A DNA stretch of 64,000 nt from Lepidodermella squamata (taxonomy: Eukaryota > Animalia > Gastrotricha). Location of the stretch: positions 1,736,001 through 1,800,000 of the forward strand of contig JBLDXI010000024.1 of NCBI GenBank assembly GCA_047495785.1, in the 5' to 3' direction. Under the pieces are notes generated by a model, which was not told the DNA's origin, ran no database searches, and saw nothing but the letters and a program-made list of their open reading frames with translations. This document shows, piece after piece, positions 2,315 to 22,190 of this stretch (the stretch's first letter is position 1; every line of letters begins with the position of its first letter). Position numbers and translations under genes: made by a program.

Positions 2315-5300
2315 TCACTCCTCGTCGTCGCCTTCATCGGTCGACGTGCCGGAATGCTCGACAGACGAAGCTTGCACGAGTGGCTGCGTCGACGAAGTAG
2401 CGGATGAATACTTGGTTAAATGCGCGCCGAATTCACCGTACCGCGGCGGGTCGATAACAGTCGTGTAAGGGCAGGGCTGAGCTTCTTGATTGCGATGCAT
2501 TTCTCTCAACTGATTTTGAACGCCTAGTATTGTCTTTTTCACATGCAACGCGCTGTTTCGCACGGTTGGATCTCGGTCCCATAGCTCGACGACTAACCGG
2601 CCGAGGGTTGTGAGGATTCTTTTGTGAGCGGGGCAACAATCTGGTCGGGGTTCAACAAACCGGGGCGGAATGACGGGACGTTCTTGCCGACGACACACGG
2701 CCTCCAACATGTCTTCGTCGGACGGATCTGAGGGGACGAGATTAGAGTAGGGCAAGGCATACTCGTCAGCAGGCGATTCGCTGTGGATGTTGCACCGCGT
2801 CAGGATTTCCCAGAGCACGAGGCCGAAGGCGTACAGATCAGCAGCTATGTACGAATCGAAAGAACTGGCGTGGAATGAGCCGTCGAGAAGTTCCGGCGCC
2901 ATGTATCGCCGCGTTCCGACACGCAGGTTAAATGGAATATCCAAGCTTTGAGTCGACGCGGTGTATTTTACAGCGAGACCTTGAATAAACACAGAAAACA
3001 AAGCACGTCAGCGTCGGCAATTCAAGTATTCATTAAAACAACAAGATTAGTGGTCGTAAATTGAATAATAAGGATTATGATTGATAACACTGAGTCTTGT
3101 GTTAATAACACTGAGAAGCCAGACTATATCACACCTCGCGAGTAACTAAGTAGGAACCAACCTTTACGCCTCTGGCCTTCAACTCGTTACATAAATTGCA
3201 CTCGTATAAATTTTGAAAAACATTAACGGCTATTTCAGAGAAGCAAGTTTTTCACAGATAAAACAAGCTAGGCCATTTGCGCGGTGTTTGTCACGGCCAG
3301 ACGCAATAAAATAATCCGTTAAAAAATGTTGTCCAAGCTAAAAATCTCCTCAGTTGTAGTTTTTATCTTATCTTAATTGTCTGGCAATTTTTTTGCCAGA
3401 CTTGTCTCAGAACAGACATCCGTTGTAGAGTGGGTGGCTCTTATTTCGGTCTGGCCTCAAATTATTCGGACAATTGAGGGTCGCTGACACATCTTGAACC
3501 AGGCTGAATTTGGTGTCATTCTCAAGTTCATGGGCTGATGACGAATTTCGATAGTTCAGCCGAAAAAGTCAAATTTAAGCTTGCTTACGTGAGTTTCATG
3601 AACATATAAACGAACATGAGCAACGATATTCGTCATGGAGGGCTTTCGAATGACACAAAATTTGGCTGGGTTGAAGTTAACCTTGATGCGACCGAAAAAA
3701 CCCCAAATTAGAGCCACCCATTGTATGTTGTATGACTAAAATTTTCAAAATTATCAACATCTCTTGCTTCATTTAAAGCAGTCAGTGTGTTTCAGCTTTC
3801 ATCCATGTTGCGAAGTGAGATAATACTCCTCTCAAAATAGCTATTTCCAATATATATTTATTTTCCAATAATATTTAATTTTAAATTAGCCACCTTAAAA
3901 ATTCAAATTTTCGTCCATTTTTTCTTCCTAGAGACGAATCTTTATATTAAAAACTGCGGAAGAATTTTCTGACGTTGTGTTATATTGACCAGGAGTCCTC
4001 CTTCACTTCTACATATAATTTCTAAACGGTCTTTCGATGTAATCTGAGTAAGTTTTTTTACAGATACTTTTCATTTTTTCAATCCTCTATTTTCTTCCAT
4101 TTAACAGTTTTATTGTATATTTATGTGTAAAATGGTAAAGCAGGCTTACCAAAGTCAGCAATGCAGGCCGAGAGATGACTCGTAACTAGAATGTTTTTCG
4201 ATTTGAGGTCGCGATGAGCAATCGCGGGTTTGCCCTGATTGCCTGGAATTTCCATGTGCAAATGAGCGACTCCAGCTGCAACACCCATGGCGAGGCGGAG
4301 GGCGATCCGCAACGATACGGTTTCCATGGTCAGGAAATCGAACAGCGAGCCGCGGGCGTGGAATGACGTGACTAACCATAATTGCGTAGTGAGACCCGTA
4401 TCTAAGAAATAACAACAACGCAAATATGTAATTACGCCGCATTTAAATAGCCAACGTATTTTTTATCACTTCTGCGTTTTCCTCAAAAAAATTCAATTGC
4501 GTTTCGCACTTCCTCGAATATTTGTTGAAAATTCATATCGCAATCAGGTTTTTAGCTCTCTGTTATTATGAGCACCGCACAAGGATCAAATTTCACGCGC
4601 ACGCCCACTTGACTTTCACAGCTTGCCAATTCAACAAGACACACGTTCGTTTTTTATGCCTTCATGGACAGTTTCAAAGTTTAATGGCGCACTTTTTGCG
4701 ACGATTTCTGCCATAAAAGTTCACGATGGCCATAAAATTTCTGCACGGTAGCCCCTTCACTTTTGAACTCTAATTGGCTATCCTTACGAAAAAAATGCAC
4801 GTAATCCTCATATTATGTGGCCTTTTACAGAAGCGTTGGGAAAATAAGCCGGCCGCAAAAATCTAACTGGCCGGGGTTGCGCGAGATGTGAGAAATAACA
4901 CAACGTGTGTTAAGAACGCTCATAGTTCATCAAGCGGCCGATGTTATTTTCAGTTTGCGCTACACGAAGATGAAAAAACAACAAGGTTGAAGCCTACCAC
5001 GGCAACGTCCATTTCAATTAACATACAATTTCATACTCGAGAATCTCCATCTTAAAACAAGCACAATGATTTTCCTTCACGTACATTCAAGGTTGGAAAA
5101 ATCCGAAAAAATGAGATCAATCAGACAGAAAATGGCGGTATTTATAGATTTCGAGGACAACTGAGATAATCCACCTCAATTTCCTGATTTATAAAACTCG
5201 ATTGAAAGTGACACAGCGATCAATTTTGTTAATCTACCCGTCTCTTACTTTCCTTTTTGAAGAGATTACTTTCGAGATCCGTGGTATAGTTACTTAGTAG

Positions 5301-6922
5301 TTGAAGTATCGAATATCGCAATAACCAACGTGCATCTCAAATTATCTTACGCATGCGTAATGCCAAGGTTGGCGCGAGTGCGATGAAAACACGCAGGTAA
5401 TTAAAATTTAATGAGAGAACACTCACCTTTCGAGTCAGCGGCGACAAACGTAAGCACGTTCTTGTGCCGCATCGTAAGAGCATTGTATATTTCGATTTCA
5501 CGAGCCCACGACTGCTGCTCGCGAGACGGAAAGACTTTAACAGCCACACGGCCGCCAACCCATGACCCGGAATACACCTCGCCATACCGGCCTTTACCCA
5601 CCAGCTGACCGAGTTGTATCTGCCTAGCCACGGTTCGAGTGCCGAGTAAGGGTCGCCCGGACCCGGAACCCGATGTTGAAAATTCGGCGTTGAACTGCGA
5701 ATTATTTAGCTGTTGACTGCGATTATTTCCGGTCGAGTTGGTGGTCGGGGGTAGTAGCGATTCACCGGTTTGCATCGTGCTCGAATTTTCGAGGGTGGTC
5801 GGAGATAACCGGCCGTTACCATTCGAGCCGATCACCACATTCGGGTAACGACCGCCGTTACCGAAAATCCTCGGCAGCCTGCGATTCGACCCGATAGGCC
5901 GGCCTGGTTTATAAATAGGACCAGTACCGTTACTGAACGAAATCGACTCGCCGTTTTGAGTGCCGCCGTGATTGAACAACATTTGACTATCAGGCTGGTG
6001 AGAAATACTGGTTGTAACCGTACCGGGCGTGGTTGAACCATGTGAAGGGCGCCGGCGGGAGAAGGCCGACGAAAACGCGACCAGCCAGCCGTTCCGCCTG
6101 GCTGACATTGAATTCTGCGTTGTTGGTGTACTAGACATTGACCGGTTATTCATTTCAGACTCCTGACGCCGGCATGTCCGGTCGTACTCGAGTTTATATT
6201 TCACAATACGGTTCCAAGAAAACAGAGCGAAAAATGATATCGCGACAAAGACAACGCAGATTATGATTATCGTTAAAATCATTGAAAAATGGTTCGAAGA
6301 CGTAGCGATTGCCGCGCAAAATTTGTCGATCTGAATCGGCTCGGTGCCGTGCCATTTTTCTTTGATTTTCAACACCATATCCGCATCACACATTTGCTGC
6401 TGAATTTCAGCTATTGTCTTATTGTTGCAAAAATCACTAGTCGCGCAGCAATACTGGAAAGTATGAATCGGGCCGAGATGGCTGTTATGAGCTGAGAATG
6501 GCGCATCTTCGTTGCAGTGCATATTCAACGGGGCGAACATTGGCTGTTCACAGTGCGGATTGATAGACCATTCCAGCGTGTTGACCTCTATCATAATTTC
6601 GACGAGACAAAACCCGTCATGGGCGTCGTGCCTCAAATCGCAGTACTGCTGCTTCGAATTCACATATTTCGGATCGCCCGTCGCGTTCAGATTATTACAT
6701 GCCGGCAAATGAGGCGGTGGCTGTTGATTTCCCCAGTCGCAGAAACATCGATTTACTGTGAATAAAACGAAAAAAAAGGAAAATGCAAACAACATAAAAA
6801 ACACTCATTTAAGACGAAAAATATGCAATACCTTTAGTAATAGAGCAGTTTACGTTATAAACCAGGAAGAACAGAACAAAGAACAGCCCGGAGCGCAGCA
6901 ACCGTTCAGCTAGTGACGGCAT
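2315..6922 (-). CDS. TGF-beta family type I receptor Ser/Thr kinase, most similar to the ALK4/5/7 (activin/TGF-beta, Babo) class; 4 exons (6922-6832, 6755-5427, 4401-4150, 2979-2315)
   Basis: Signal peptide exon [21 protein letters not shown]; Cys-box CCATSDFCN; TM helix; GS box STSGSGSG; [35 protein letters not shown]45 loop [16 protein letters not shown] and [16 protein letters not shown] resemble ALK5. All introns are GT-AG and phase-consistent. Confidence 0.93.
3428..3723. mobile_element. Palindromic MITE (Tc1/mariner-like, TA-flanked) in receptor intron 3
   Basis: Imperfect TIRs tagagtgggtggctcttattt / aaattagagccacccattgta, plus an internal inverted pair (aatttggtgtcattc / gaatgacacaaaattt). 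Confidence 0.6.
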
Positions 6923-7199: not shown

Positions 7200-7979
7200 T
7201 CAAAGTGTTGATGTGGCAAGAGTAGACCAAATAGTAGTGGCTGCGAATGTTAGAAATAAAAGGCCACCAGCAAATGTTAACGTTCTAACAGAAATAAAAC
7301 GAGCCGCGGTTCTGCCGGCTACTACTGCAAGCATGGTACACACGCAATGCGCGACAAATCCACCGAAAAACACGCTAACCATCTCATTGCTTTGAGATGC
7401 GAGAATGAGGGTACTAATTTGGCTGCGATCGCCCCATTCCGCGACAAATGTGAGCGCGAATGATTCGACCAGAGCCGGAGAAAAGCATTTTCGCATTCTG
7501 TCCAAAAATCTAGCCATCATGCCCCGAATTCCTGTCCCTTCCTCCTTTGATAGTAAGCTCTCATTGTCCATTTCACTCGCGATGGATTCATCCGACATTT
7601 TGCATGCCTCTTGTATTGATTGAACTCCGACGACTCCGAATAACACGGCACCGAGATATTGCGTAACATTACGCGGAATGACTGAAGTAGCATAGCCTAA
7701 CAGGCATGATAAAAAATGCATAAGGCCTAAACTAAACGCCGCTCCGGCGAATACTAGCAAGCGAGGATAACGCGCGGCAAGCATTGCTGCAATGATGAAA
7801 GTTTTGTCACCAAGCTCATTCAGAATAATCATCGAGAATGTCGACATGAATGTAACAGCGAAAGAGCTTTGTCCATCCTCATCTCCCGACATTAGGTTTT
7901 CTGCGGTCGCATCAACTGCAGCAGTAGCCTCCGGCGCTAACACCGCGGCACGGCCGACAGGAAGAAAGTTCATGCGCAT
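7200..7979 (-). CDS. TMEM165: GDT1/TMEM165 (UPF0016) Golgi Ca2+/Mn2+ antiporter, single coding exon
   Basis: Both family motifs ELGDKTF and EWGDRSQ; hydrophobic helices. Start may be ATG 7979 or 7973. Confidence 0.92.
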   Translation of the reverse strand: MRMNFLPVGRAAVLAPEATAAVDATAENLMSGDEDGQSSFAVTFMSTFSMIILNELGDKTFIIAAMLAARYPRLLVFAGAAFSLGLMHFLSCLLGYATSVIPRNVTQYLGAVLFGVVGVQSIQEACKMSDESIASEMDNESLLSKEEGTGIRGMMARFLDRMRKCFSPALVESFALTFVAEWGDRSQISTLILASQSNEMVSVFFGGFVAHCVCTMLAVVAGRTAARFISVRTLTFAGGLLFLTFAATTIWSTLATSTL

Positions 7980-10229
7980 TGCCAAATTGCGAAAATGGGA
8001 GGAATAAAGTTTAACTCAGAGCATGTAGCGAAGACCCTTTTGTAAGTCTGTTCACTGATCTATCAAAAATTTTCGACCGGATGATTATTATTAGAAATAT
8101 AAATATGCAATGGAACAATTCTCCAAAGTCAAGCACAAAATGAGAGGCTCCAAGCATAAGGATGGCTGATGGCCCCCGATTATCACATCAATAACAGCCA
8201 GCTAAACAAAAATTCTAGTGGCGTAGGATGCAATATTGCTTATTGTCTATAACGTAAGAGTAAAAAGCTGCAGAATAAAAACACTTGGAATCTAGCGTTG
8301 AAACCTCAACTCTTATCAGAAGCACACTGTTTGCGACCACTGGCAATGATACGGAATAAAAAGCGCATAATTAACTACAAGATTAAGTATACAAATTAAT
8401 AATAAAAATAGGGAAGCGGCTTCACTTTTTAATCCGATAGAATGAATGGATGTTTGATCTGCGTTATTAGCTGATGAAAGATGAAAGTATGAATATTTCC
8501 AAACGTAGCTGGAGGAGCGCCACTTCTCGACTTAGTCGGGATACATGCGTGCGGTTATTAGAGAACGTAATATGATACAACCGGATAAAACAGCTAATAA
8601 ATATCTTCAGAACCAAGTGCTGCTCTTCAATAATGGCTAGGAAACTCCCAAATCTACTACAGATGGCGCAGGAGTTTCTAATCGGACAAGCAAACGCTGA
8701 GTAGCAATACAGAAGCCACTGGACTGATTGTATCAATTTAGAACAAGTTTCCTACTAAAAAATGCCTTCCAAAGGCTGCACTCAGGCGATTCGATGGGCG
8801 ATAGGCGATGTTGCGCATTCGCTACCTTTTACCATGCAGGATCATGTCGCTTGAAATTAACGTTCAAGATGTCACACATATGTTACTTACACTCGACTGT
8901 TAACAAGTGGCTATTCGAAAAATATTCAATCGGCAATCGGAAACGTCTATCGTTAATTCTTAATTCTCATGGTTGGTTAAATGAATAAAAGCATCCACTC
9001 GATTACTGCCCTCAACATCGATAAGGATTCCTTATTCTTACGAAGAAAACACACGAAGAAACACAGGAAGAAAACAAGAAGACGTTTCTTATTCGACAAC
9101 TCTGCCATAAATTCTATAACGTTAAGTTAAAGTGATTTAAGAACTACAAATTCTTATCAGAGAGTGAAATATATATTGATAGCTAAATAATAGAAGGTGA
9201 GAGCTTTTTACTGTTTAATGAAATCCCGAGCGAGAATTCAGTTGAACAGTAATCTGTGATCTGCGGTTACTCAAACACATCTAAATAGTGAACTGGAACA
9301 ATAGATCACGGCTGATCACGCCTGTATCTCACGGCAAGGCATACTGAGATAAAGACAGCAGGCAGATACCGCCTTTGCAATAGAACAGCAAGTCAAAGAG
9401 TTATTACGCTCTGCACTAAATTTGGCCCCATCCGTCGAAGAGGAAACCACGTGCTGACGTTTTCAGAACGTTAAGGTGTAGTTTAGTTCCTAGCTGCTTA
9501 CGAGGTCCCTAACCCGGCAATACATTCACTGCTGATGTTCTCTACAGGGAGCAGGCATAAAAATGCGTTTCCGCTAACTCGGCAAAGCCTAATAACGCTG
9601 CTGTAAAAAGACACTTACAAACTGCAAAAAGACGGCTGATAAAAACAAAAGAATGATAGCTATTTCGTGTATCGTTTACGGGTTGTACGTGTACGTTTTA
9701 CGCAACCTGTGGCTGGAGCGATGAACTTCTTCCGCAAACCACATAATCGCCCCTTTTCCCGTCGTTCAATAGCCAACTTTTAGTAACCCTCTATTTCCAA
9801 ATAATATCAACACCCAATCAATGCAACATAAAAATTGTTTTTAAATAACTCAATAAATTCAAGTGTTTGATAAGAATGTTTTGATATGAAAACCAAATGA
9901 CAAAAAATCACCTTGGCAACGATGATAATTCATTAAACGCATAGGCGAGACCCTCTCGTACACAGTAGCGCGTGGCCAAAGAAGATCTCCAACTCTAAAT
10001 GTCATATTTTGCCCTAATTCATGCAATAGTTGGCGTTGCTAGCTATCTCAATATAATTATTCTTGGAAAATGCTTTATTTTGGAGAAAGCCGACCCCGTT
10101 GTTATCAAATCGTGTTGGTCGATTTCGATCTGTTACTTTATAGTCGATTTTTGCGCATGAGTTTATGCAATCCTTCCATCATATCTAAATTATGCAGTTT
10201 AGAGTTTTGTAAGAACCTTGATTTGTGTG

Positions 10230-13200
10230 ATGGAAAGTCAAGATGGTAAAGTGGAGCAGCCTGAGTTGGCGCCCGCCGAGCCTTCGACTGATGACATTTC
10301 CGTTGGTGAAGCTGGTGCTTCAGATTTAGCAAACGCCACTGGTAGTGACGAAAATACCCAAGATGCCTCAAAAGAAGATACCAAAGACAGCCAGGATAAT
10401 GCCGCTGAATCAAATCCGGCTGACACTGTTCTGCCGTCTTCCGAGGAAAACAAGAATGAAATGGCTGACAACGAGGCGCAGCTAACAACAGACATTTCCC
10501 AAGGTACCAACGATCAAATTTCTGCTGAAGCTTCACAGGGAGAAAAAGAAGCGACTGAAGTACAAGATGGAGCCGGGCGTGAGGGGAGCATGGCGTCTTC
10601 CAGCAGAGCCGAGCTAGCGATAGATACCGCTACGCCTCATCCCGAGGACGGCATTGAAGGCGAAAGTGAAAGTCGTGTTTTGGGCCGAGAATCTTCAGAA
10701 ATGGAGATCGCTGGAGCTTTGGATAATAGAATAACTCCACAAGAAGAGCCTACTGTGATAGGTATATATCATTAATTAAGGCGAGAACCTTGTAGATGTT
10801 GATTTCTTATCAGATAAGGTCGACGTGAGACCTCCAGCGGAAATTTCAGATGAAAATGACGGACAGCTCGATCCAGGTATTACCCCATCAAAGTGTTTGG
10901 ATGCATTCGCTTATTATTTTCTGAATTCAGACGATGGGCGACTCTCTCCGGCTACGAAAGTTAATATTCGGCGTTCCTCCCTAAAGAAGGGTGCAATCGT
11001 GACTTCGGAGGCCGCTAAGGTCACCTAACCATTTGTAATTTATTTATCTTAGAATAACGCCAGATGTATTTTAGGGAGGCAAAGGAAAGTCTATCCAATT
11101 CAAAGAGGACGATAACAGAGATGGTCTGGAAGCTTCCTCAACCAAAGTGTAAGTTGATGCTTTATTTCTTAATTAATCGTCTATCAGTAAACCCTTGTTT
11201 AGTCCTGAAAACAGCGCACTAGGCTCAGTTCAGCATCACCCATTCGAAGAAAATATTGTCGAAGAGGAAGTCGACAATCTTCATGCTTTGGTATGTACCT
11301 GTTACAGTGGCACTCTTTTCCTACTCATGCAAATGTTTCAGAGTCTTGTTTGGGGATTTGGCATTACTCCTACATTGCCAGTTATCAATCTCACTTCTTC
11401 CGATCAAACTAAAATGTTCTATACCTGCTCGCATATCGGAATACTATACGACTACGTCAATCATCGCCAGCAGTTGCTCCAAGCTCACGTAACTATTAGT
11501 CTTAAATTTACTAATTAAAATTATATAATTAAACTCATTGCATAAAGCGAAACCCGATCAGCTGCAGCGCTGCTAGTGTCAACAGGAGATGGCTTGTAAC
11601 CGCTGACAAAGGGCCTCATAACACAATTGTTGTCTGGGACTCTCATTCAGGGTAAGTAATCCAGCATCTATAGGTTCCTATGGAAAAACTAATTTTGATC
11701 GTTAGGGTGCCTGTGAGGACTATTTTAGACCCTCATCCAAATGATGGCACTGCGGCAGTTGCGATATCCCACGACAATAAATTTATTGCTTCTCTGTCAG
11801 CCGGTCGGCCTCAAGTTTTGGCTATTTGGGACTGGTTGGACGAAACTGTTAATGTCATTGTTGCTGCCCGTTTAGATGTAAGAATATTCGATTTTTTTTC
11901 ATTTCACGTCAAATTGCCTGATTTTTTTCAGCTCAATCATTATGAACAAACGTGGCTCACATTCAAGCCAAATGATCCATTCCAGCTTCTGTCAAATAGC
12001 GATGGTCAAGTTTTGTTCTACGAATGGAATAAAGCAAAACAAACGATTGCTTACTATGCTCCTGTTGTCGATGAAACAATGATAAGCCGCGCTTTGGGAA
12101 AATTCACGAAAACCGAGTACATGAGAGGCGACAAAGAGCAGCGAGCTTTAACAGCTACAACTACAGGCAATTTGATTGTTTGGGAACTTGTTGAAGGCTC
12201 AACGATTCGAGGGCCAGGGTTCACCAAAATTACAATCGCACCGAATTCACTGGCGAACAAAAGGGTGACGAAAATTCTGAAAGTCACCGATAAATGCGTT
12301 GATGTTCTCACAACCATTAATGGTTATGTTGTTTGTGGCGATTCGTCCGGAATTGTTAAATTTCTCGAAAACGACCTAAAAATGCGAAATTGGTTCTATG
12401 ATTTGAATATCGGGCCAATCAAGTCTGTTTCATTCGATTTCGAGCCGAAATTTTCGTTCGAGCCAAGCGAAGGTGGAGCTGGCGCCAAGCAATACACGAG
12501 AGACGCAACTATACCGGCGCATATTTTCCCAATACCAAGCTTCATAGCTTCATCTTCAAGTGGAAATATTGCCCGGTTCAACGCGCCAACTTCTGAAACT
12601 AAAATTTTGCTGAAAATGCAAGACTCACGCGTACATGCGATTGCGGCCCATCCTAGTTTGCCTCTATTGGCAATTTGCGGCTATAATGGCTTCATTCAAA
12701 TGGTCGATTACCGAAGGAAACGTGTTCTTTACTCTACTATGATCGATATCTCATCAGGGGTCGCCGTTCGTTGTTGTACCTTCGACCCATTTGGTGACAT
12801 CCTAGCCCTTGGCTTGACAAATGGAGAAGTATTACTGCTAATTGCGAGTTCACTCCGTCCAGCTATTGAACGGCCTTTAGTCAGCTCTGCTGTCGCTATT
12901 TTACACATCGCCTTTTCGCACGATTGCAAGTACCTGGCTACAGCTGACCAACAGTATACGACCACCTTATTTTGCCAAGGATTTTCTCAGTCTGACCCAT
13001 CGAAGGAAAATTGGATTTATTACGGCCGTTATCGGGCTCATTACAAACCTATTCAAGACCTGCTTTTCGGCATAAATATCGATTCGGGCCGTCCCAGGTT
13101 GTTAACCCTGGGCGTCGATCGGTTTTTGGTCGAGTACGATTTGGACGAAAGCAGCGAGGACAACTTGGTTTTGCTGCGACGCGATCGCATCGAGCAATCT

Positions 13201-15301
13201 GCAATTCCGATGTGTATCGCTCTGTACCCTCAAGGAATCTCCAAGGAAAGCTTCATTCTAACTGCAAATTCTCAATTCAAACTGAAACTTTACAACTCAA
13301 CAACGAAAAAATGCCGTTACACCTATCTGGGACCCGCGTATGGTTCGCCGCTTCAAAAGTAAAATTAATGGCTTTAATTAGTCCAAAAAATGATGATTAA
13401 TTTTTCTAGGATTGTTCCGTTACCAGCTCAAGTTGGCGAGCAGCCTAATAGGAGATATTTGGCCTATATAACAAAGGACATGCTTGGCCTTAGCATTATG
13501 CCCCTCGATGGGAATCCGCATAAATCAGTTTCTCTACTGGCCCATCCTCGGCAAATTGTCGATTTTTGCACCAGTTACGACGGCCAGCACATTTTTACGT
13601 GCGGTGGCCCTGATCCTGTGGTCCATATGTGGCGAGTCAATGTCCTGCCCTTGGACGCTCAGGCTCAATTGGCGGGTGGCGATACCATTGAGCCGTTCTA
13701 TCGACTGCTGGAAGGCGGCCGGCAGGGACCGTTTGTTCGGGAAATGGAAGACTTCTTCTATTATCTTCAAATCAAAAGGTTAGCCTCGTTTACTTATTTC
13801 ATGAGACATGTACCTATCTTATTTTATTCGAAAACCCAAAATATGACCTCTTAAAACCGCCGACATTAGAGTTTACTCGAAATCAAGTTCCACCGGATTT
13901 TTGCAAATGAAGAAAATTCTCAAGGATCGCGGTAAATAATCCTGAGCTCGACTTTTTTAAAAGCAAATTACCATTAGGTTCAGGGATATTACAGCGTGTC
14001 CCATAAGTTGCGCAACCATTTTTTTAATTAGGCAACTTTTTGTTAGGAAATTCAACAATTAGGTAATCAATTTAGTTGAATTTCCTTCAAAAAATTGAAC
14101 CTTCCGACAGAATATTCCCAGCCGCGATTTAACCGAAGAAATAACATACTTGATTACTATTCTCGTGTTTTTTGTTTTTGATTGGAATTTTCCGGCCATG
14201 AGATGTCGTCCTTCATTTTGGAGTTTCTGAACCCTTCTCCGTGTATTTTTTTGTTCCGTTACTTATGGGACTCGCTGTATTGATTTGGAAAGAAGCTTTC
14301 AAAGTCTTGACCCTTCTTTAAGTTTAGAAAATTTATTGTAAAAATGATCCAGTCTGCTCTCATGTCAGTTGTTCCCAGTCAAATTTTTGGTTTTCTCATT
14401 AACTCAGACATTTGTCTGAGGAACAGCGTTTTTCTCATAAAGTTATATTCCGATTTTCGTGGAAAAATGTCTAATTAAATTGGATATATTTCAGACAAAT
14501 TTAGTCCAGAGTCCAAATTTATAATTTAATTTTAAATCAATTATTTTCCAGCCAAGGAATTGATGACATGTCTGCGCGAACGGTTGGCGATACAATCCCA
14601 TTGGATGAAGTCCCAAATTTGATGCGAGCCCTTGGCTTCTACCCAACCGAGCAAGAAATTGAAAACATGATCGATGAGGTCAAATACAGTAAATGCGTTG
14701 ATACCCCGGATATGGCCCTAGTCGATCGCATCAACCTGGACGATTTCCTACGTCGTAAGTTATATTTAGAAAAATCTTAAGCTGGATATATTTTTAGATT
14801 AATCTCCTTGCAGTTTATATTAATCATCGGCCTGCTTTTGGTCTGGATCCAGAGCAAATAATGTGGTCCTTTAAAACCCTATCGTCTAGCGGTATAGCCG
14901 GAAATCCGGAAGATTACGACGCGCTGAGCAGAGGCGAACTTTTCGCTCTCGTTCAAAACAAAGGCGAACACATGACTGAATACGAATTAGGCGACGTGCT
15001 CGTTTCACTGCTCGGCTATAACGTCGAGGACGAGTGCGGCGAGAAAGTTGGCCTCGATACTGAAACTATCAGCCAGCTGATTGATGAGAGCCTACCTGAA
15101 ATGATGTCATCCTCGCATTTCGTCTCAAATCTCATGGGGCTGGGGGTTCAACCAACCGGAACCAACGTCACGGCTGAGCTGCCGTCCAAGCTCGAACACA
15201 CGACTTCAGTCATGCCGCGGCGGGGTCTTACTACAGAGCAGACCCTATTATCAGAACTCACGATACCAGAACTTGCAACAAGCGCGACAATGACTGATTG
15301 A
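10230..15301 (+). CDS. CFAP251: Cilia- and flagella-associated protein 251 (WDR66); acidic N-terminus, WD40 repeats, EF-hand-like C-terminus; multi-exon
   Basis: Motifs RLLTLGVDRFLVEYDL, RIEQSAIP, LPLDGNPHKS-type segment, MEDFFYYLQI, NLMRALGFYPTEQEIENMIDEVKYS, YINHRPAFG, GEHMTEYEL across spliced ORFs. Confidence 0.88.
13992..14277. mobile_element. Tc1/mariner-type MITE in CFAP251 intron
   Basis: 17-bp TIRs cagcgtgtcccataagt / acttatgggactcgctg (1 mismatch), each flanked by TA. Confidence 0.8.
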
Positions 15302-16643: not shown

Positions 16644-18898
16644 ATGACTTGAGTTTTAATAAAATTTGCAAAAAAAATAAAAATAGACCGAACTTTACAG
16701 CCTAGGTACCTGGGATAGGATGGGTACACAATAAAAGATTTATTGTAGGCAGTTTCTTGCTACTATACTACTTCGCCTACATTTTGCGCTCATTGCGCCG
16801 CGTGGTACAAAAAGCAGCGCCTAGATAATTAAGGTGTATATTTTCATGTCAGTGATCGATTTTGTCGGTTCTCTGACTCGCAGAATCATATGGCCTAATA
16901 ACCTAATAGCAGACAGTTGACAAATAATGAAGTGACGGCAAACAAGACGTCAGTGATGTGTCATTATTATAATCTGATCCACTCGGTTAACCTGTAAAAT
17001 TCAAGTTTGCCCCATACATTTTTTAAAACTGTAAACACTTCAGAAGTCCTTTCCTATTCGAGTCAGCCGTCACATGCATGAGACGTTAGTACGTATGTGG
17101 TCACATATTATAAGTCTCGTGATTAATAAAAAGCAGACGCCTATCCCACTGTGTCCTCGCAATGACAATTTAAAATCTGGCTGGATGTAACGGACTTGAG
17201 CGTAGATGGCCGGTTTTGTTCATGATCATTGGTGAGACGCGGACAACGTAAATTAAGCGGCAAAGCTACGACCCATCATTCTGGCCTGAAGTCATTTTGA
17301 TGTACATGTCGAGTTGCGTATTGACCCGATTTACCTGCTCATAGGCATTGTCGAATTTCACATGGATGAATTTAGCTCACAGACTGTGACAGGTTGGCGA
17401 GTGACTAATTGCTCAGTTCGATGGACATTGAATGATGTGATAGCATTGCTAGACAAAAAATCACGGCATGCTTTGCGCTAATTAAATCGGCGGGTGATTC
17501 AGCCAAAAATTTTGAACAGATGATAATAGAAGTTCCGTGAATTTTTAATCAGTCCGTGTTTAATTGCATTACCTCAGCGACTGCAAACACAGATGTCCTA
17601 GACAGTTGTTGTAGCGTGATTTTTGAGAATTTTACAAAGGCGGTTATAATAAATAACTAATAGTTGTATCCAATATCAGTCCGGTAACTGCTGCAATGTA
17701 ATTCAGAACATCAGCAAGCTTGAAAAGTGACAATTTATTTCATTGAATAGCAAGCTGTCTTGTTTAGTTGGTCGCACCCTAGACTTGATTGAGCCATAAA
17801 AAATTCATGACCTTAAAGCGAGAAACTAAGAGAAAAAAATTGAGTACTTTTTTCAGGAAGTTTTCAGCTAATGTTCGGATGCGCCGCACAGTCTCGCCGT
17901 TGCGGAAGCTTTTTATCCAACACGCAGGAGGATAATACCTGGAGACGTCTGGTGTATTCAAATGTCAAACTTGGTCAAATACTTTCGACGACCACATCGG
18001 TCCGGTTTGACAAGGAAGCGTGGATTTTTCGCAGAAAGTTTGAGCGTGATTGAAATTTGAAAAAAGCGACAAAGCGATGAGAAAAGTGTTTTTATTATTT
18101 TTTTCGGCATTTTTCAATTTGAAAATTCTTTCAATGATCGACCCTCCATAATAGCAATAGAACAGATAAGTAAAATGGTTGAATACGGCCATTTTCTCAC
18201 ATAATAGAATAAAAAGCAAATCGATAGAAAAGTCTCCGGGTTGTTTTAAAAAGAGTTTTGGTCTCGTCGCCATGAAAAAGCGGTCACAATTGAAGAGACG
18301 ACGGTAGCGTAATACGATAATAAATACTTTACAGGTAGAAAATTTCAAATGAGGGGAATTTCAACAATGACATCTTGTATTACATATACATGGCGACGAG
18401 AAGTTGTCTTTTTGGCGAGATATAATCCAGAGATTGTGATAAGATGGCAAAGTATTCATTTTTTTACATGTATATAATATAATAAAAAGGAGACGACAAT
18501 TTTCGCCGAAATTGCATCGTTCACCATATATCGTAAAGACACAGAAATTCAAAAGAAAAAGTGTTCATATCTATTCAAATGTTTTCAATTTTTTTGATGA
18601 AAGCAAATATAAATTTATAGCTGTAGAATAGATCATCAGACCACTTGACAAAAAGTTGACTTGGACAATTTTTTTTAAATAACATCTGTTATTCTTTCGA
18701 ATAGCTCGAAATAATTTTAGAGCTTGAAGGTAGGCACAATAGGAAATAAATACATAATGTTGACAAAAAAGTTGATTCGATATACATTTAAATAATCATA
18801 TAGCATTTTATAATAACTATCTATCTCAGTAGAATGCAAATGCAGAGGACAACAACTGTCTTTCGAATAGGGCGGGTAGATAGGGGTTCACATATGGG

Positions 18899-20088
18899 TC
18901 AAACGTCATGGCAAAAAGTGCGGTATAGATGCGCGTGTTTTCGCTCTTCGCGCCGGTTCGCCGACGCCTGGCGCCGCCTTGATTTTGAACTACTTGCGGA
19001 CAATTTCCCCGTCCGCCTGCCGGAGTGCGGCCGCGCTGTTGTCGCTGAAGAGTGGTGGTGTAGCTGCGTCTTCAGCCATTGGCACATTTTACGCACTGTG
19101 TCGTCGATCGTCATGGCGTTGCAAAAGTTCTCGCCATTACAGCAGTATTCGTAAATGTAGGGCGCCCGCGATGAAGATTTAGGGTCGACTTCGACGAACG
19201 TCCCAGCGGTACCAACGCCGTCGCAGCTCGAAACCGGCAGTTTTCTGTCGATACAGCCGCGGAAAATGTCGGCGGTTCCGTTCGTGCCGTCTGGGACGTC
19301 CAGCGTCAAGAACAGCGAGCATGAACCGTCGTTGCTTTGGCAGTAAGGCAGCGCGTCTTCCTCGTTTTCAAAGCCTGAAAACAGCGCCTCGTCCGAAGGC
19401 ATGTGGCATTGCGAAAATCGACCCGGCATATTAATGTCACAAGCACATTTCAAGGCATCTGGGAAAAAAATATTTAATTAAAAATTTATTGCTTAAATAT
19501 TTTACAAATTACTTGAAGACGGTTTGCTGACTAACCGGTCCCTGGATGAAGGCTTCTTGTTATCCAATAGACCAGTCATCGCGACCTTAATGGTATTATC
19601 AACAGGGACCTCAATGCCACATAGGCGTTTAATTTCCGAATCTGCCATGTTGTTTTCGCCGAGGTTTTTCTTCAGCCAGACGCACAGCTTATCAATAAGT
19701 TGCGACTCGGTAACGTTGTTGCAGTAGTCCGAGCCTGTGCAGCAATAGTCGTACGCAAACGAGTTGGGCCCGACTCGTTTCACGTTGAAGAAGTCGCGCT
19801 TGTTCTTCGACAGCGATTTGTAGCAGTCGAAATCGACCGAGCAAGTTCGCAGCATGAACGAGCCGCAACTTTCGACGGGCACCAGCGACATCGAACAGCT
19901 ATCGGCCGAACACTCACCGCGCGGCCCCGACGCGCCGTTGCACTCCGTCCAATCATCCTTACACTTAATCGCACCTGATAAATTGAAATAAAATATATCG
20001 TGGCTGTTTTTTGGAGAAAAAAAGCGCTCACCTTGTGCGGTTGCCAAAAAAGCAATGACGAAAGTTGAGACCAGCAAATGCCGCTGCA
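18899..20088 (-). CDS. Secreted protein with two tandem activin/TGF-beta type I receptor ectodomain-like (three-finger) domains, no TM or kinase; exons 20088-20032, 19974-19513, 19458-18899
   Basis: Signal peptide MQRHLLVSTFVIAFLATAQG; two phase-1 GT-AG introns join ORFs 19502..20095 and 18899..19453 in frame; Cys boxes YCCTGSDYCN and YCCNGENFCN; basic C-terminal segment. Confidence 0.8.
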
Positions 20089-21531
20089 TTGTCACCAGAG
20101 CGTATTAAGGTGGATAAAATAACAGTCCTATTAATGGCGAATAAATGGGCGCTGATGAGTCAAATGATGGGAGTTCACTTCTTGGTGTAACCCCCATAAA
20201 CGGCCGTTATTGGTGGAGCAGGTGACGCAACGTTGCGCGTATTGGGTTACGTCTTTGGTTTATTATAATATATAATATATTTGCCAATATTTACCGTTAC
20301 GATGTTCGGTGTAACGGTTGCGCAAGTTAACAATCTAGTCAAAGACAAGTAGTCGGGATTTTTATGGCGCGTGTTATAATTTTACTTGGAATAAATAATG
20401 AGCGCAGTAGCAGATAATTACCTATATGTACTGAAACCGCAGTGAACAATCAGCGCAACTCAGGTGATTACTGTTATAACACTGATGGGTTGTGATAGGT
20501 CGGCGCGCTTGCTGATTACTCGTCTCCGCCTCGCGTCTGTGTGTGCATCCTCTCAGAAGTTGCTCAGCCGCTACCTCAGCTCTATTATCTGCTACTGAAA
20601 TCGATGCCTATGAAATTGCTTGAATGCAGCTAACAACCGCTTGCCGCCCACATGAGCCGGGCGTCTAGGATCAAAAGCGCAATAAATCCGCGCCTCATGA
20701 CAATTGAAGTGCTAGAACGATCTCGTTTTGTCAAATAAAAATAATAATGATTATCACAGCGACTGGCGGTGACTGATGTCAAACAATCAACACCCCCGAC
20801 TGAATAAAAGTTGCGCACTCTAGGGAAAAACAATCATCTCAAACAATCTCACTTGGCTGATGGCGGTCGCTTTGGTTTTGGCTTGTCTGGCGCTCTCAGC
20901 TGCGGCACTTCAAAACTTCATAATGTTTCATTCATGGATGCTAGCGTACTCTTTAAACAGAGACAATTTTTAATTGTTTAATCCCTCGATTTATTCATAT
21001 CATTAACAATGCTTATACATCTTTGCAAGATAGCCTGGACCCCACATAGCGACGACACCGCGAATCGTGGGCACAAAAACCGTCGCTAGTGGGAGCAAAT
21101 GTGTTTTTTATTGAATTTTGTTCGCTCACATAGCCATACCATGGTGATTTTTTGGATTAGATCTGCTGACGTAAATTATGGCGCCTGCTTCCGACCAATT
21201 TTACAGCAAAAAACATGTAAGTTTGATCAATGAAAATAGGCGCGTTCAAGGCACATGAAATTAGTATAAAAACAATAACAATCGAATCAATCCATACAAC
21301 TCTCCGCGGTACGACTCGTGATATTCAGGTAAAAATAACTCTCCAGGGTTTACATAATTAATCACGCGGTTTGATTGATTCACAATCTCTAGAGACGTAG
21401 ATATCGATTATCTATTCACAGATATATTTCTCAATTAGATAAAAGGGTTTTGCACACGCAGCAGCATGTTTACATCGATAATATTGGAAAAACAAAACAA
21501 TTTCTGAGACTATCAATTGTTCAAGAATCGT

Positions 21532-22190
21532 TTATTGAGGTGCCGTTGAGCTGAACATTGATCCGAAGGGCGAGGATGATGACCCTGAGGCCGGCGGAGG
21601 GGGCTGCGAGGGACCTAGCTGTGATGGATCGTTAATTTGAGTCGGATCAACGGGCCGAAATGATTCTGAGGAGTAGCGAGTGAATAGAATGCCGAGACCT
21701 TCGATTAATGCTAGCAGGACACCGCCGATCACAGCAGAGCCGACCATAGCGGGAACGCCACTTCGTACAGCGACAAGACCGCCGGTGACGAAGCCGGAAA
21801 TAATTGCGTTCCATGGATCCTCCTTTTTCCGAAGATATACCAGCGTGCAATCAACAGCCGAGAATGACAATCCCCAAATTGCGAAATTACCACCGGTGAT
21901 AGGCGCTTTCTCCCTAATGAATCTTAGAGAACCCAACATTCTGCGATATGGTCCCTAAATAAAAAACACAAGAATGATATTTCTCCTCAAAGCTTAGGGG
22001 AGAACTTACACTTGGAGCATTTTTATATCCCTTATAAGCATGGAATATTGAGCCACCGATGGCTCCCATGGCAAAGGCACCGCCAGTATCGTCGACAATA
22101 CGCCAAGGACTACATAACACATGAAATCGTTACTCGGAAACTTCAAGTAATTTTTTCAAAATACCAAGGTTCTCGAGCATATTCTTCCAT
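21532..22190 (-). CDS. TIMM17: Mitochondrial inner membrane translocase Tim17; exons 22190-22165, 22109-22010, 21954-21532
   Basis: [56 protein letters not shown]. Confidence 0.96.

What the first reader, a model, noticed from the sequence alone, without database searches (positions are those of the whole stretch)
18899..20088. Secreted tandem-ectodomain copy of the neighbouring TGF-beta type I receptor: candidate soluble ligand trap
Seen: hand splicing gives signal peptide + domain 1 + linker + domain 2, with no hydrophobic TM or GPI tail. Both domains end in the same signature as the receptor ectodomain at 6300-6755, Y-C-C-x5-C-N-x2-T-x8-C: receptor [23 protein letters not shown]1 YCCTGSDYCNNVTESQLIDKLC, D2 YCCNGENFCNAMTIDDTVRKMC. 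Each then has one more Cys (IDKFC, IKRLC, YRTFC). D2 also matches the start (LKCACD vs NRCFCD; YC..DGSC vs YC..DGFC). Each domain is preceded by a phase-1 intron, as in the receptor. Known: canonical ALK ectodomains end at CCx4-5CN without this extra Cys pair; TGF-beta ligands are dimers with two type I sites; BAMBI is a kinase-less decoy but is membrane-anchored with one domain. Inference: local duplication of the receptor ectodomain exon produced a bivalent soluble antagonist or ligand shuttle, which I do not recognise as described.
Basis: partly seen in the sequence, partly recalled or inferred. Interest (0 to 1): 0.88.

Follow-up and report, generated by a model that had tools for sequence, protein, structure and literature searches.

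The report
Secreted twin copy of receptor's outer domain
A small freshwater animal has an expressed, conserved gene for a secreted protein made of two copies of the ligand-binding outer part of the TGF-beta type I receptor gene lying 12 kb away. It looks like a natural version of the two-headed "ligand traps" that drug designers build, but nobody has tested whether it binds a ligand.

Summary
A three-exon minus-strand gene (20089-18899) encodes a 359-aa protein: signal peptide, 12-Cys domain D1, 39-residue linker, 12-Cys domain D2, basic tail. It has no membrane span and no kinase. An RNA-type contig skips both predicted introns exactly and runs unspliced about 750 nt past the stop.

D1, D2 and the ectodomain of the neighbouring 778-aa type I receptor find one another in profile searches (E 2e-5 to 8e-3 at proteome scale). 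They share a lineage-specific extension after CC-x5-CN with an extra Cys pair. They group together against 29 canonical type I ectodomains.

A profile search of 1.84 billion proteins finds only three clusters. These are the D1, D2 and receptor counterparts in one related animal, where D1 and D2 are again one gene, all 24 Cys are kept, and gene order is kept.

D2 keeps type-I hallmarks (LKCxCD start, DG-x-C). Its model matches ALK1, ALK3, BMPR1B and AMHR2 ectodomains best, weakly, and no Ly6 protein ranks above them.

Ligand binding and antagonism are inferred only. Verdict: a real, conserved gene and a new variant of the decoy/soluble-receptor theme. No earlier scan report on this gene was shown to me.

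The parts
20032..20089 (-). Exon 1: start codon and signal peptide (MQRHLLVSTFVIAFLATAQ-G). It ends in phase 1.
   Evidence: The RNA-type contig covers the last ~35 nt and joins them to exon 2. The first 23 nt are not covered by that contig.
19975..20031 (-). Intron 1: 57 nt, GT..AG, phase 1. It is absent in the related animal.
   Evidence: Skipped in the X2 contig. In L001 the signal peptide and D1 are contiguous.
19513..19974 (-). Exon 2: 462 nt, a symmetric phase 1-1 exon. It holds domain D1 (12 Cys, residues 21-138) and the 39-residue linker.
   Evidence: pN is 0.25 in the core against 0.50 in the linker.
19459..19512 (-). Intron 2: 54 nt, GT..AG, phase 1, lying between D1 and D2.
   Evidence: Skipped exactly in the X2 contig with 255 nt on the shorter side. 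The related animal has a 61-nt phase-1 intron at the same place.
18899..19458 (-). Exon 3 coding part. It holds domain D2 (residues 176-299: LKCACD start, DG-x-C, CC-x5-CN, C11), a basic tail (net +11), the terminal YRTFCHDV with C12, and the stop at 18899-18901.
   Evidence: The AF2 model has pLDDT 80.5.
18149..18898 (-). 3' untranslated stretch, continuous with exon 3 in the RNA-type contig. There is no further splice.
   Evidence: record 9, 18149-19458.
5427..6755 (-). Neighbouring type I receptor, exon 2. It holds the 12-Cys ectodomain with the same extension (about 6304-6755), the TM, a long juxtamembrane region, the GS motif and the start of the kinase.
   Evidence: (TGF_beta_GS 5e-6).
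2315..6922 (-). Whole receptor gene. Exons are 6922-6832, 6755-5427, 4401-4150 and 2979-2315, giving 778 aa. All introns are GT..AG and phase 1.
   Evidence: The GS and kinase N-lobe are 60-63% identical to 'TGF-beta receptor type-1-like' proteins of many invertebrates.

Best explanation
Shown: this is an expressed, selectively maintained gene for a secreted protein. The protein consists of two tandem ectodomains that are paralogues of the ectodomain of the adjacent, lineage-specific TGF-beta type I receptor. They share its unusual extension after the three-finger core: a helix carrying an 11th Cys and a later 12th Cys. The protein has no membrane anchor and no kinase.

Inferred: it binds, outside the cell, the same TGF-beta-family ligand(s), or ligand-type II receptor complexes, that the neighbouring receptor binds. 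Ligands are dimers with two type I sites. The two heads are joined by a flexible, non-conserved linker of 27-39 residues, so they could engage both sites at once. That would give avidity that a single type I ectodomain lacks. The protein would then compete with the signalling receptor, acting as a decoy or trap, or it would hold and move ligand as a shuttle. The strongly basic tail, conserved in charge but not in sequence, may tether it to sulphated matrix.
For: Gene model and expression:
- The spliced RNA-type contig matches the predicted introns exactly and has no downstream exon.
- The signal peptide is the only hydrophobic stretch.

Homology to the neighbouring receptor:
- Profile searches hit in both directions at Z=20000. 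The D profile finds the receptor at 2.3e-5 and 1.2e-3. The receptor profile finds D1 at 7e-5 and 2.4e-4 and D2 at 3.7e-4 and 7.6e-3. Shuffles reach at most 9.6 bits against 24.7.
- hhalign gives 93% probability for D against the receptor.
- The six domains form one group, 96/90 support, against 29 canonical type I ectodomains.
- A profile search of 1.84e9 representatives finds only the three counterpart clusters.

Type I receptor character:
- D2 starts LKCACD, like the canonical LKCxCD, and has C-x-S-N-D-G-S-C, like TCxTDGxC.
- hhalign gives 78% probability, P 1.7e-5, for D against canonical type I ectodomains.
- The D2 model core matches AMHR2 (Z 5.3), ALK1 (5.1), ALK3 (4.9) and BMPR1B (4.8). 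No Ly6 protein is in the top 50. The meaningful Foldseek rows are all type I ectodomains.

Conservation:
- The related animal has the same D1-intron-D2 gene at 52% identity, with all 24 Cys kept and gene order kept.
- pN is 0.23-0.25 in the cores against 0.50-0.58 in linker and tail, with synonymous sites saturated.
- Tail charge is +11 here and +16 in the relative.

Precedent for the mechanism:
- Engineered single-chain bivalent traps, two ectodomains joined by disordered linkers, neutralise ligands potently through avidity (PMC12597760).
Against: - No binding, ligand or signalling data of any kind.
- Pfam Activin_recp does not match D1, D2 or even the receptor's own ectodomain. A canonical type I profile scores them at E 0.08 or worse.
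- Similarity between D and the receptor is concentrated in the C-terminal ~27 residues.
- D1 has lost the C-x-C start, and its model is poor (pLDDT 61).
- The D2 model was built with canonical type I sequences in its alignment, which may bias its matches.
- The receptor's kinase is of the TGF-beta/activin type. From my own knowledge, type I ectodomains of that class usually bind ligand weakly without type II.
- The rest of this genome could not be searched for further members.
Confidence: 0.5

Rival explanations
1. The domains are receptor-derived but the protein is not a ligand trap. It has acquired another partner. Possible partners are the receptor's own ectodomain, a type II receptor or a co-receptor, or matrix through the basic tail. 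It would then act as a secreted co-factor, agonist or presenter, or in an unrelated pathway.
For: - The finger regions, which make ligand contacts in canonical type I receptors, are the most diverged parts. Only the C-terminal motif and extension are strongly shared.
- D1 has re-arranged its cysteines and lacks C-x-C.
- The basic tail is conserved in charge only.
Against: - Both cores are under strong constraint.
- D2 keeps the type I hallmarks.
- Linkage with the receptor has persisted across two species.
- None of this excludes the rival.
Confidence: 0.25
2. It is an ordinary member of the Ly6/uPAR three-finger superfamily, like secreted two-domain Ly6 proteins. The resemblance to the receptor would be convergent or reflect only the shared superfamily motif CC-x-CN. 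Its target would be unrelated, for example an ion channel.
For: - Unchecked scan notes say this genome holds many Ly6/three-finger genes.
- No Pfam receptor-domain hit.
- Language-model neighbours include Ly6 and toxin families at 0.75-0.79.
- A quiver-like cluster appears among weak structure matches.
Against: - No Pfam Ly6, toxin or QVR hit either.
- D2 starts C-x-C, not C-x-x-C.
- Profile hits to the receptor are significant in both directions.
- The extra-Cys extension is shared with two receptor kinases.
- The profile found no other protein in 1.84e9, including contigs of the relative.
- There is no GPI signal.
- Receptor ectodomains rank above Ly6 in every search.
Confidence: 0.12
3. It is a decaying duplicate or an annotation artefact with no function.
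For: The 5' end of the mRNA, the first 23 nt of the CDS, is not covered by the RNA contig.
Against: - Correct splicing and moderate depth in the RNA run.
- An intact ORF in two species, with 24 of 24 Cys kept at 52% identity and saturated synonymous sites.
Confidence: 0.03

Closest known systems
Ectodomain of TGF-beta family type I receptors (ALK1-7; Pfam Activin_recp, three-finger toxin fold)
   Same: - D2 has all ten canonical Cys, including the type-I-specific C-x-C start (LKCxCD), the DG-x-C motif and CC-x5-CN.
- The best structural matches are ALK1, ALK3 and BMPR1B.
- The nearest relative is a bona fide GS-domain receptor kinase next door.
   Different: - No TM, GS or kinase part, and two domains in tandem.
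- An added C-terminal extension with a sixth Cys pair.
- Too diverged for the Pfam model.
- D1 lacks the C-x-C start.
BAMBI (kinase-less pseudoreceptor of the type I family)
   Same: A separate gene encoding a type I-like ectodomain without a kinase. BAMBI is known to damp signalling (my own knowledge). A weak structural match appears.
   Different: BAMBI is membrane-anchored and has a single domain. It acts by joining receptor complexes at the cell surface. The protein here is soluble and has two domains. There is no Pfam BAMBI hit.
Engineered single-chain bivalent receptor traps (e.g. T22d35, two TbetaRII ectodomains joined by disordered linker; PMC12597760)
   Same: The same architecture: ectodomain, flexible linker, ectodomain, secreted. 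Bivalency gives avidity for dimeric ligands.
   Different: Those are man-made and mostly use type II ectodomains. This one is a natural gene, uses type I-derived domains that have diverged from each other, and carries a basic tail.
Soluble receptor isoforms made by alternative splicing or shedding (e.g. soluble ALK7, TbetaRII, betaglycan; my own knowledge, not checked here)
   Same: A kinase-less soluble ectodomain that can sequester ligand.
   Different: Those come from the receptor gene itself and are monovalent. Here a dedicated, separately transcribed gene has been conserved across species.
Multi-domain Ly6/uPAR proteins (uPAR, C4.4A, snake PLI-gamma; my own knowledge)
   Same: Tandem three-finger domains; some are secreted.
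   Different: - A different N-terminal Cys spacing.
- No GPI signal.
- No Pfam Ly6 hit.
- A specific sequence relation to a receptor kinase's ectodomain.

Membership tests
TGF-beta type I receptor ectodomain (Activin_recp, PF01064) | Match to the Pfam model at its gathering score | tested here: not met
   D1 and D2 have no hit even at E 10. The neighbouring receptor's own ectodomain also has no hit at E 0.1. A profile of 56 canonical ectodomains gives E 0.08-200.
TGF-beta type I receptor ectodomain (Activin_recp, PF01064) | Ten-Cys pattern with N-terminal C-x-C, DG-x-C in finger 1/2, and CC-x4-5-C-N at the end | tested here: met
   D2 and the receptor align Cys for Cys with 29 canonical sequences, and D2 starts LKCACD like the canonical LKCxCD. 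D1 meets this only partly: it has no C-x-C and one Cys is relocated.
TGF-beta type I receptor ectodomain (Activin_recp, PF01064) | Profile-profile homology to canonical type I ectodomains | tested here: inconclusive
   hhalign gives 78% probability, P 1.7e-5, over 61 columns for D against canonical ectodomains. The receptor against canonical gives 84%, P 7e-6.
TGF-beta type I receptor ectodomain (Activin_recp, PF01064) | Three-finger fold closest to solved receptor ectodomains | tested here: inconclusive
   The D2 model has pLDDT 80.5. VIA gives Z 5.3 for AMHR2, 5.1 for ALK1, 4.9 for ALK3 and 4.8 for BMPR1B over residues 1-124, with no Ly6 in the top 50. Foldseek E is only 0.4. The alignment used for folding held canonical sequences. 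The D1 model is too poor to use.
TGF-beta type I receptor ectodomain (Activin_recp, PF01064) | Binds a TGF-beta-family ligand | not testable with these tools
   No multimer prediction or assay is available.
TGF-beta type I receptor kinase (whole protein) | TM segment, GS motif and Ser/Thr kinase domain | tested here: not met
   There is no hydrophobic stretch after the signal peptide. The transcript ends without further exons. The neighbour has all three parts.
Lineage-specific extended ectodomain shared with the neighbouring receptor | Y-x-Y-CC-x5-CN, then C11 about 12 residues on, and C12 in an I/Y-x-x-[FLI]-C context | tested here: met
   Present in D1, D2 and the receptor in both species. 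Profile E-values in both directions are 2e-5 to 8e-3 at Z=20000. Only these three clusters exist among 1.84e9 proteins. The six domains are monophyletic at 96/90.
Ly6/uPAR (LU domain) | Match to UPAR_LY6, Toxin_TOLIP, QVR or CD59 Pfam models | tested here: not met
   No hit at E 10.
Ly6/uPAR (LU domain) | C-terminal GPI-attachment signal (most members) and an L-x-C-x-x-C start | tested here: not met
   The C-terminus HLYRTFCHDV is hydrophilic. The starts are C-x-C in D2 and C-x6-C in D1.
BAMBI | Single type I-like ectodomain plus TM plus a short kinase-less tail, with a Pfam BAMBI match | tested here: not met
   No TM and no Pfam hit. There is only a weak structural resemblance.

The most novel reading that the evidence does not exclude
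This would be the first natural single-chain bivalent type I receptor trap. It is a dedicated secreted gene, born from the ligand-binding exon of a type I receptor and duplicated in tandem. It would use avidity for the two type I sites of a dimeric ligand, and a matrix-binding basic tail, to shape the range of a lineage-specific TGF-beta-like signalling system. Unchecked scan notes report clusters of minimal TGF-beta-like ligands in this genome.
Probability: 0.35. Interest if true: 0.75.

Novelty: new variant of a known kind. Interest (0 to 1): 0.62.

Why it matters
Extracellular control of TGF-beta/BMP signals is known to use unrelated binders such as noggin, chordin and follistatin. It also uses the membrane pseudoreceptor BAMBI and shed or spliced single ectodomains.

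A conserved gene that strings two type I receptor ectodomains into one secreted chain would be a different evolutionary solution. It is the same solution that protein engineers reached for therapeutic ligand traps. It would show that receptor-exon duplication can create soluble antagonists.

It also gives a directly testable entry into TGF-beta signalling in Gastrotricha, a phylum with almost no molecular data. The shared helical, disulphide-stapled extension is a structural novelty of this receptor subfamily.

Tried and rejected
- Pfam scans of D1, D2 and the receptor exon gave no ectodomain family.
- A profile of the three domains against PDB sequences gave no hit at E 10.
- My first choice of donor for intron 2 (19535) broke the frame. 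The phase-1 donor at 19512 is the right one, and RNA confirmed it.
- The search for homologous proteins with D2 found only P0001. The full 359-aa protein could not be used as a query, because a spliced protein has no reference and I did not type it.
- Recent gene conversion as the source of the shared motif is rejected. Nucleotide identity is 0.47-0.54 and third-position identity 0.38-0.45.
- The second helix of the D2 tail in the model is not trusted, because the relative has three prolines there.
- The D1 model (pLDDT 61) was not searched against structure libraries.
- dN/dS could not be given as a ratio because synonymous sites are saturated.
- The second receptor paralogue of the relative is not detected by the D or receptor profiles. 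The extra Cys pair is therefore shared only as a pattern there.
- Paper searches for gastrotrich TGF-beta signalling, Activin_recp-only secreted proteins and natural decoys found nothing relevant.
- The organism's name rests only on an earlier scan note.

Full report
**What is in the sequence.**
The feature is a minus-strand gene.
- Exon 1 (20089-20032) encodes a typical signal peptide and ends in phase 1.
- A 57-nt GT..AG intron follows.
- Exon 2 (19974-19513) is 462 nt and symmetric, phase 1-1. It encodes domain D1 and a linker.
- A 54-nt GT..AG phase-1 intron follows.
- Exon 3 (19458-18899) encodes D2, a basic tail and the stop.

My first guess for the second donor broke the frame. The phase-1 donor CAA|GTAATT restores it.

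The product has 359 aa and 24 Cys, twelve in each domain. Its only hydrophobic stretch is N-terminal, and its C-terminus (HLYRTFCHDV) is hydrophilic. It therefore has no TM segment and no GPI signal.

**Expression and transcript structure.**
Run X2 covers only genic stretches of 16800-21800, so it behaves as a transcriptome. Its 1805-nt contig has 4 differences from the window and depth 74.7. It lies on 18149-19458, skips exactly 19459-19512, lies on 19513-19971, and skips the 57-nt intron into exon 1.

A DNA run (X1) covers everything and shows no joints. The three-exon model is therefore confirmed. The first 23 nt of the CDS are not covered by the contig.

**The neighbouring receptor.**
Exons 6922-6832, 6755-5427, 4401-4150 and 2979-2315 give one 778-aa ORF with GT..AG introns, all phase 1. 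It has:
- a signal peptide,
- a 12-Cys ectodomain,
- a TM segment,
- a long juxtamembrane region,
- an SGSGSG GS motif (Pfam TGF_beta_GS, 5e-6),
- a complete kinase.

Its GS and N-lobe region is 60-63% identical to proteins named 'TGF-beta receptor type-1-like' in molluscs, chelicerates and others. It is a genuine type I receptor. Even so, its ectodomain is too diverged for Pfam Activin_recp.

**Are D1 and D2 related to it?**
- CC-x5-CN occurs only three times in the six-frame translation of the window, in D1, D2 and the receptor. tblastn inside the window gives D1-D2 1e-7, D1-receptor 2.5e-4 and D2-receptor 2e-3.
- I built profiles from the window sequences plus the counterparts in the relative and scored them at proteome scale (Z=20000). 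The D profile finds the two receptor ectodomains at 2.3e-5 and 1.2e-3. The receptor profile finds D1 at 7e-5 and 2.4e-4 and D2 at 3.7e-4 and 7.6e-3. Two thousand shuffled receptor ectodomains reach at most 9.6 bits, against 24.7.
- hhalign gives 93% probability for D against the receptor.
- All six domains share Y-x-Y-CC-x5-CN. All but the relative's receptor then have a Thr three residues after the Asn. An 11th Cys follows about 12 residues after the Asn, and a 12th sits in the context I/Y-x-x-[FLI]-C. Canonical type I ectodomains lack these two Cys.
- In a maximum-likelihood tree with 29 canonical type I ectodomains, the six form one group with 96/90 support. Within it, D2 sits with the receptor (98/76) and D1 outside. 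Long branches make that inner order unsafe.
- Nucleotide identity in the shared motif is only 0.47-0.54. The likeness is therefore old and held at the protein level, not recent gene conversion.

**Receptor-type or Ly6-type?**
D2 begins LKCACD. Invertebrate TGF-beta type I receptors begin LKCxCD. D2 also has C-x-S-N-D-G-S-C-S-L-F, where they have TCxTDGxCF. All ten canonical Cys align.

hhalign of D against a 56-sequence canonical alignment gives 78% probability (P 1.7e-5, 61 columns). The receptor gives 84%. No Pfam Ly6, toxin, QVR or BAMBI model matches.

The AF2 model of D2 has pLDDT 80.5 and pTM 0.74. It shows a three-finger sheet (residues 1-112) followed by a helix that carries C11.
- Foldseek E-values are weak (0.4 or worse), but the sensible rows are all type I ectodomains: ALK1, BMPR1A, BMPR1B and ALK5.
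- An independent all-against-all alignment gives Z 5.3 for AMHR2, 5.1 for ALK1, 4.9 for ALK3 and 4.8 for BMPR1B over residues 1-124. No Ly6 protein is in the top 50.

Language-model neighbours of D1, D2 and the receptor ectodomain are nearly the same list, headed by a TGF-beta type II receptor ectodomain cluster at 0.86-0.88. These are leads only.

Caveats:
- The folding alignment contained canonical sequences.
- The D1 model is poor (pLDDT 61).
- D1 has lost the C-x-C start.
- I had no Ly6 sequences for a direct profile comparison.

**Distribution and conservation.**
A profile of the three domains, searched against 1.84 billion representative proteins, found three clusters and nothing else. 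They are ORF fragments from metagenome contigs of one related animal, and they correspond to D2, D1 and the receptor.

In that animal D1 and D2 are again one gene:
- ATG at L001:9385,
- a 61-nt phase-1 intron at the same place between the domains,
- a 339-aa product.

The signal-peptide intron is absent there. The proteins are 52% identical and all 24 Cys are conserved. Gene order is also kept: the tandem gene, a WD40 gene, the receptor, a second receptor, then cyclase genes.

Synonymous sites are saturated (pS about 0.9). The non-synonymous proportion is 0.23-0.25 in the two cores, against 0.50-0.58 in signal, linker and tail. The linker varies in length (39 against 27 residues) and in sequence. 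The tail between C11 and C12 of D2 keeps its charge (+11 and +16, pI about 12) but not its sequence. The long second helix in the model is doubtful, because the relative has three prolines there.

**A wider family trait.**
In the relative, a second type I receptor lies just beyond the first (L003:11800-13977). It has a GS motif and a kinase. Its ectodomain starts HCFC and ends KCC-x4-CN, followed by two further Cys before the TM. The extra Cys pair is thus a trait of a local receptor subfamily.

That ectodomain is not detected by the D or receptor profiles. D1 and D2 are therefore much closer to the first receptor than its own paralogue is.

**How it most likely works.**
Shown: a secreted, expressed, constrained protein with two receptor-derived ectodomains joined by a flexible linker.

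Inferred: it binds what the receptor binds. TGF-beta-family ligands are dimers with two type I sites (established knowledge). Engineered proteins that join two receptor ectodomains by disordered linkers neutralise ligands far better than single ectodomains, through avidity (PMC12597760).

The natural protein has this architecture. I therefore favour a bivalent extracellular decoy or shuttle, with the basic tail possibly tethering it to sulphated matrix. I put this at about 0.5.

Three points keep that figure low:
- There is a complete lack of binding data.
- The finger regions are strongly diverged.
- The receptor's kinase is of the TGF-beta/activin class, whose type I ectodomains usually need type II for ligand binding (my own knowledge).

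In the last case the protein might compete at ligand-type II complexes rather than bind free ligand.

**Context from the scan (unchecked).**
- Earlier notes suggest the genome is that of a gastrotrich, probably Lepidodermella squamata.
- It is said to hold many Ly6-type genes.
- It is also said to hold clusters of minimal TGF-beta-like ligands and another type I receptor.
- These are leads for candidate ligands and for the Ly6 rival. I tested none of them.
- No earlier report on this gene itself was shown to me.

**Novelty.**
Paper searches found no description of a natural secreted tandem type I ectodomain protein, and nothing on TGF-beta receptors in gastrotrichs.

Kinase-less decoys (BAMBI) and soluble ectodomains are known kinds, so I rate this a new variant of a known kind. 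It would be notable if the trap function is confirmed.

Noticed in passing
L003:11800-13977 (related animal); expected just left of the window's start: A second TGF-beta type I receptor paralogue lies in tandem with the first. It has an SGSGSG GS motif and a full kinase. Its ectodomain starts HCFC and ends KCC-x4-CN, followed by the same extra Cys pair before the TM. It is too diverged for the D or receptor profiles to detect.
   Followed up: partly
window 19975-20031 versus L001:9385-9450: Intron presence differs between the species. The 57-nt phase-1 intron between the signal peptide and D1 exists in the window species and is absent in the relative. All introns of this gene and of the receptor are phase 1, and the D1 exon is a symmetric 1-1 exon, which suits exon duplication.
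   Followed up: partly
window 20975-21800: This stretch has much higher depth in the RNA-type run X2 (300-980, against 75 for the tandem gene). It is a strongly expressed neighbouring gene that I did not identify.
   Followed up: no
window 7200-7985 (-): A GDT1/TMEM165-type cation antiporter gene (Pfam GDT1, 4e-42) sits between the receptor and the WD40 gene. In the relative's loci no called gene in that interval carries a GDT1 hit, so this may be a difference in gene order.
   Followed up: no
window 11680-15300 (+): A large WD40/EML-like beta-propeller gene, followed by an ORF (14568-14780) that looks EF-hand-like by eye. I guess a cilia- or flagella-associated protein. It is convergent with the tandem-ectodomain gene, and its position is kept in the relative.
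   Followed up: no
window 19100-19468, runs X3 and X4: A metagenomic run (X3) and another run (X4) hold short contigs that are 95-99% alike to exon 3. One contig extends ten bases past the exon 3 boundary into intron 2 and then diverges. These are probably DNA of a close strain or species in environmental samples.
   Followed up: no
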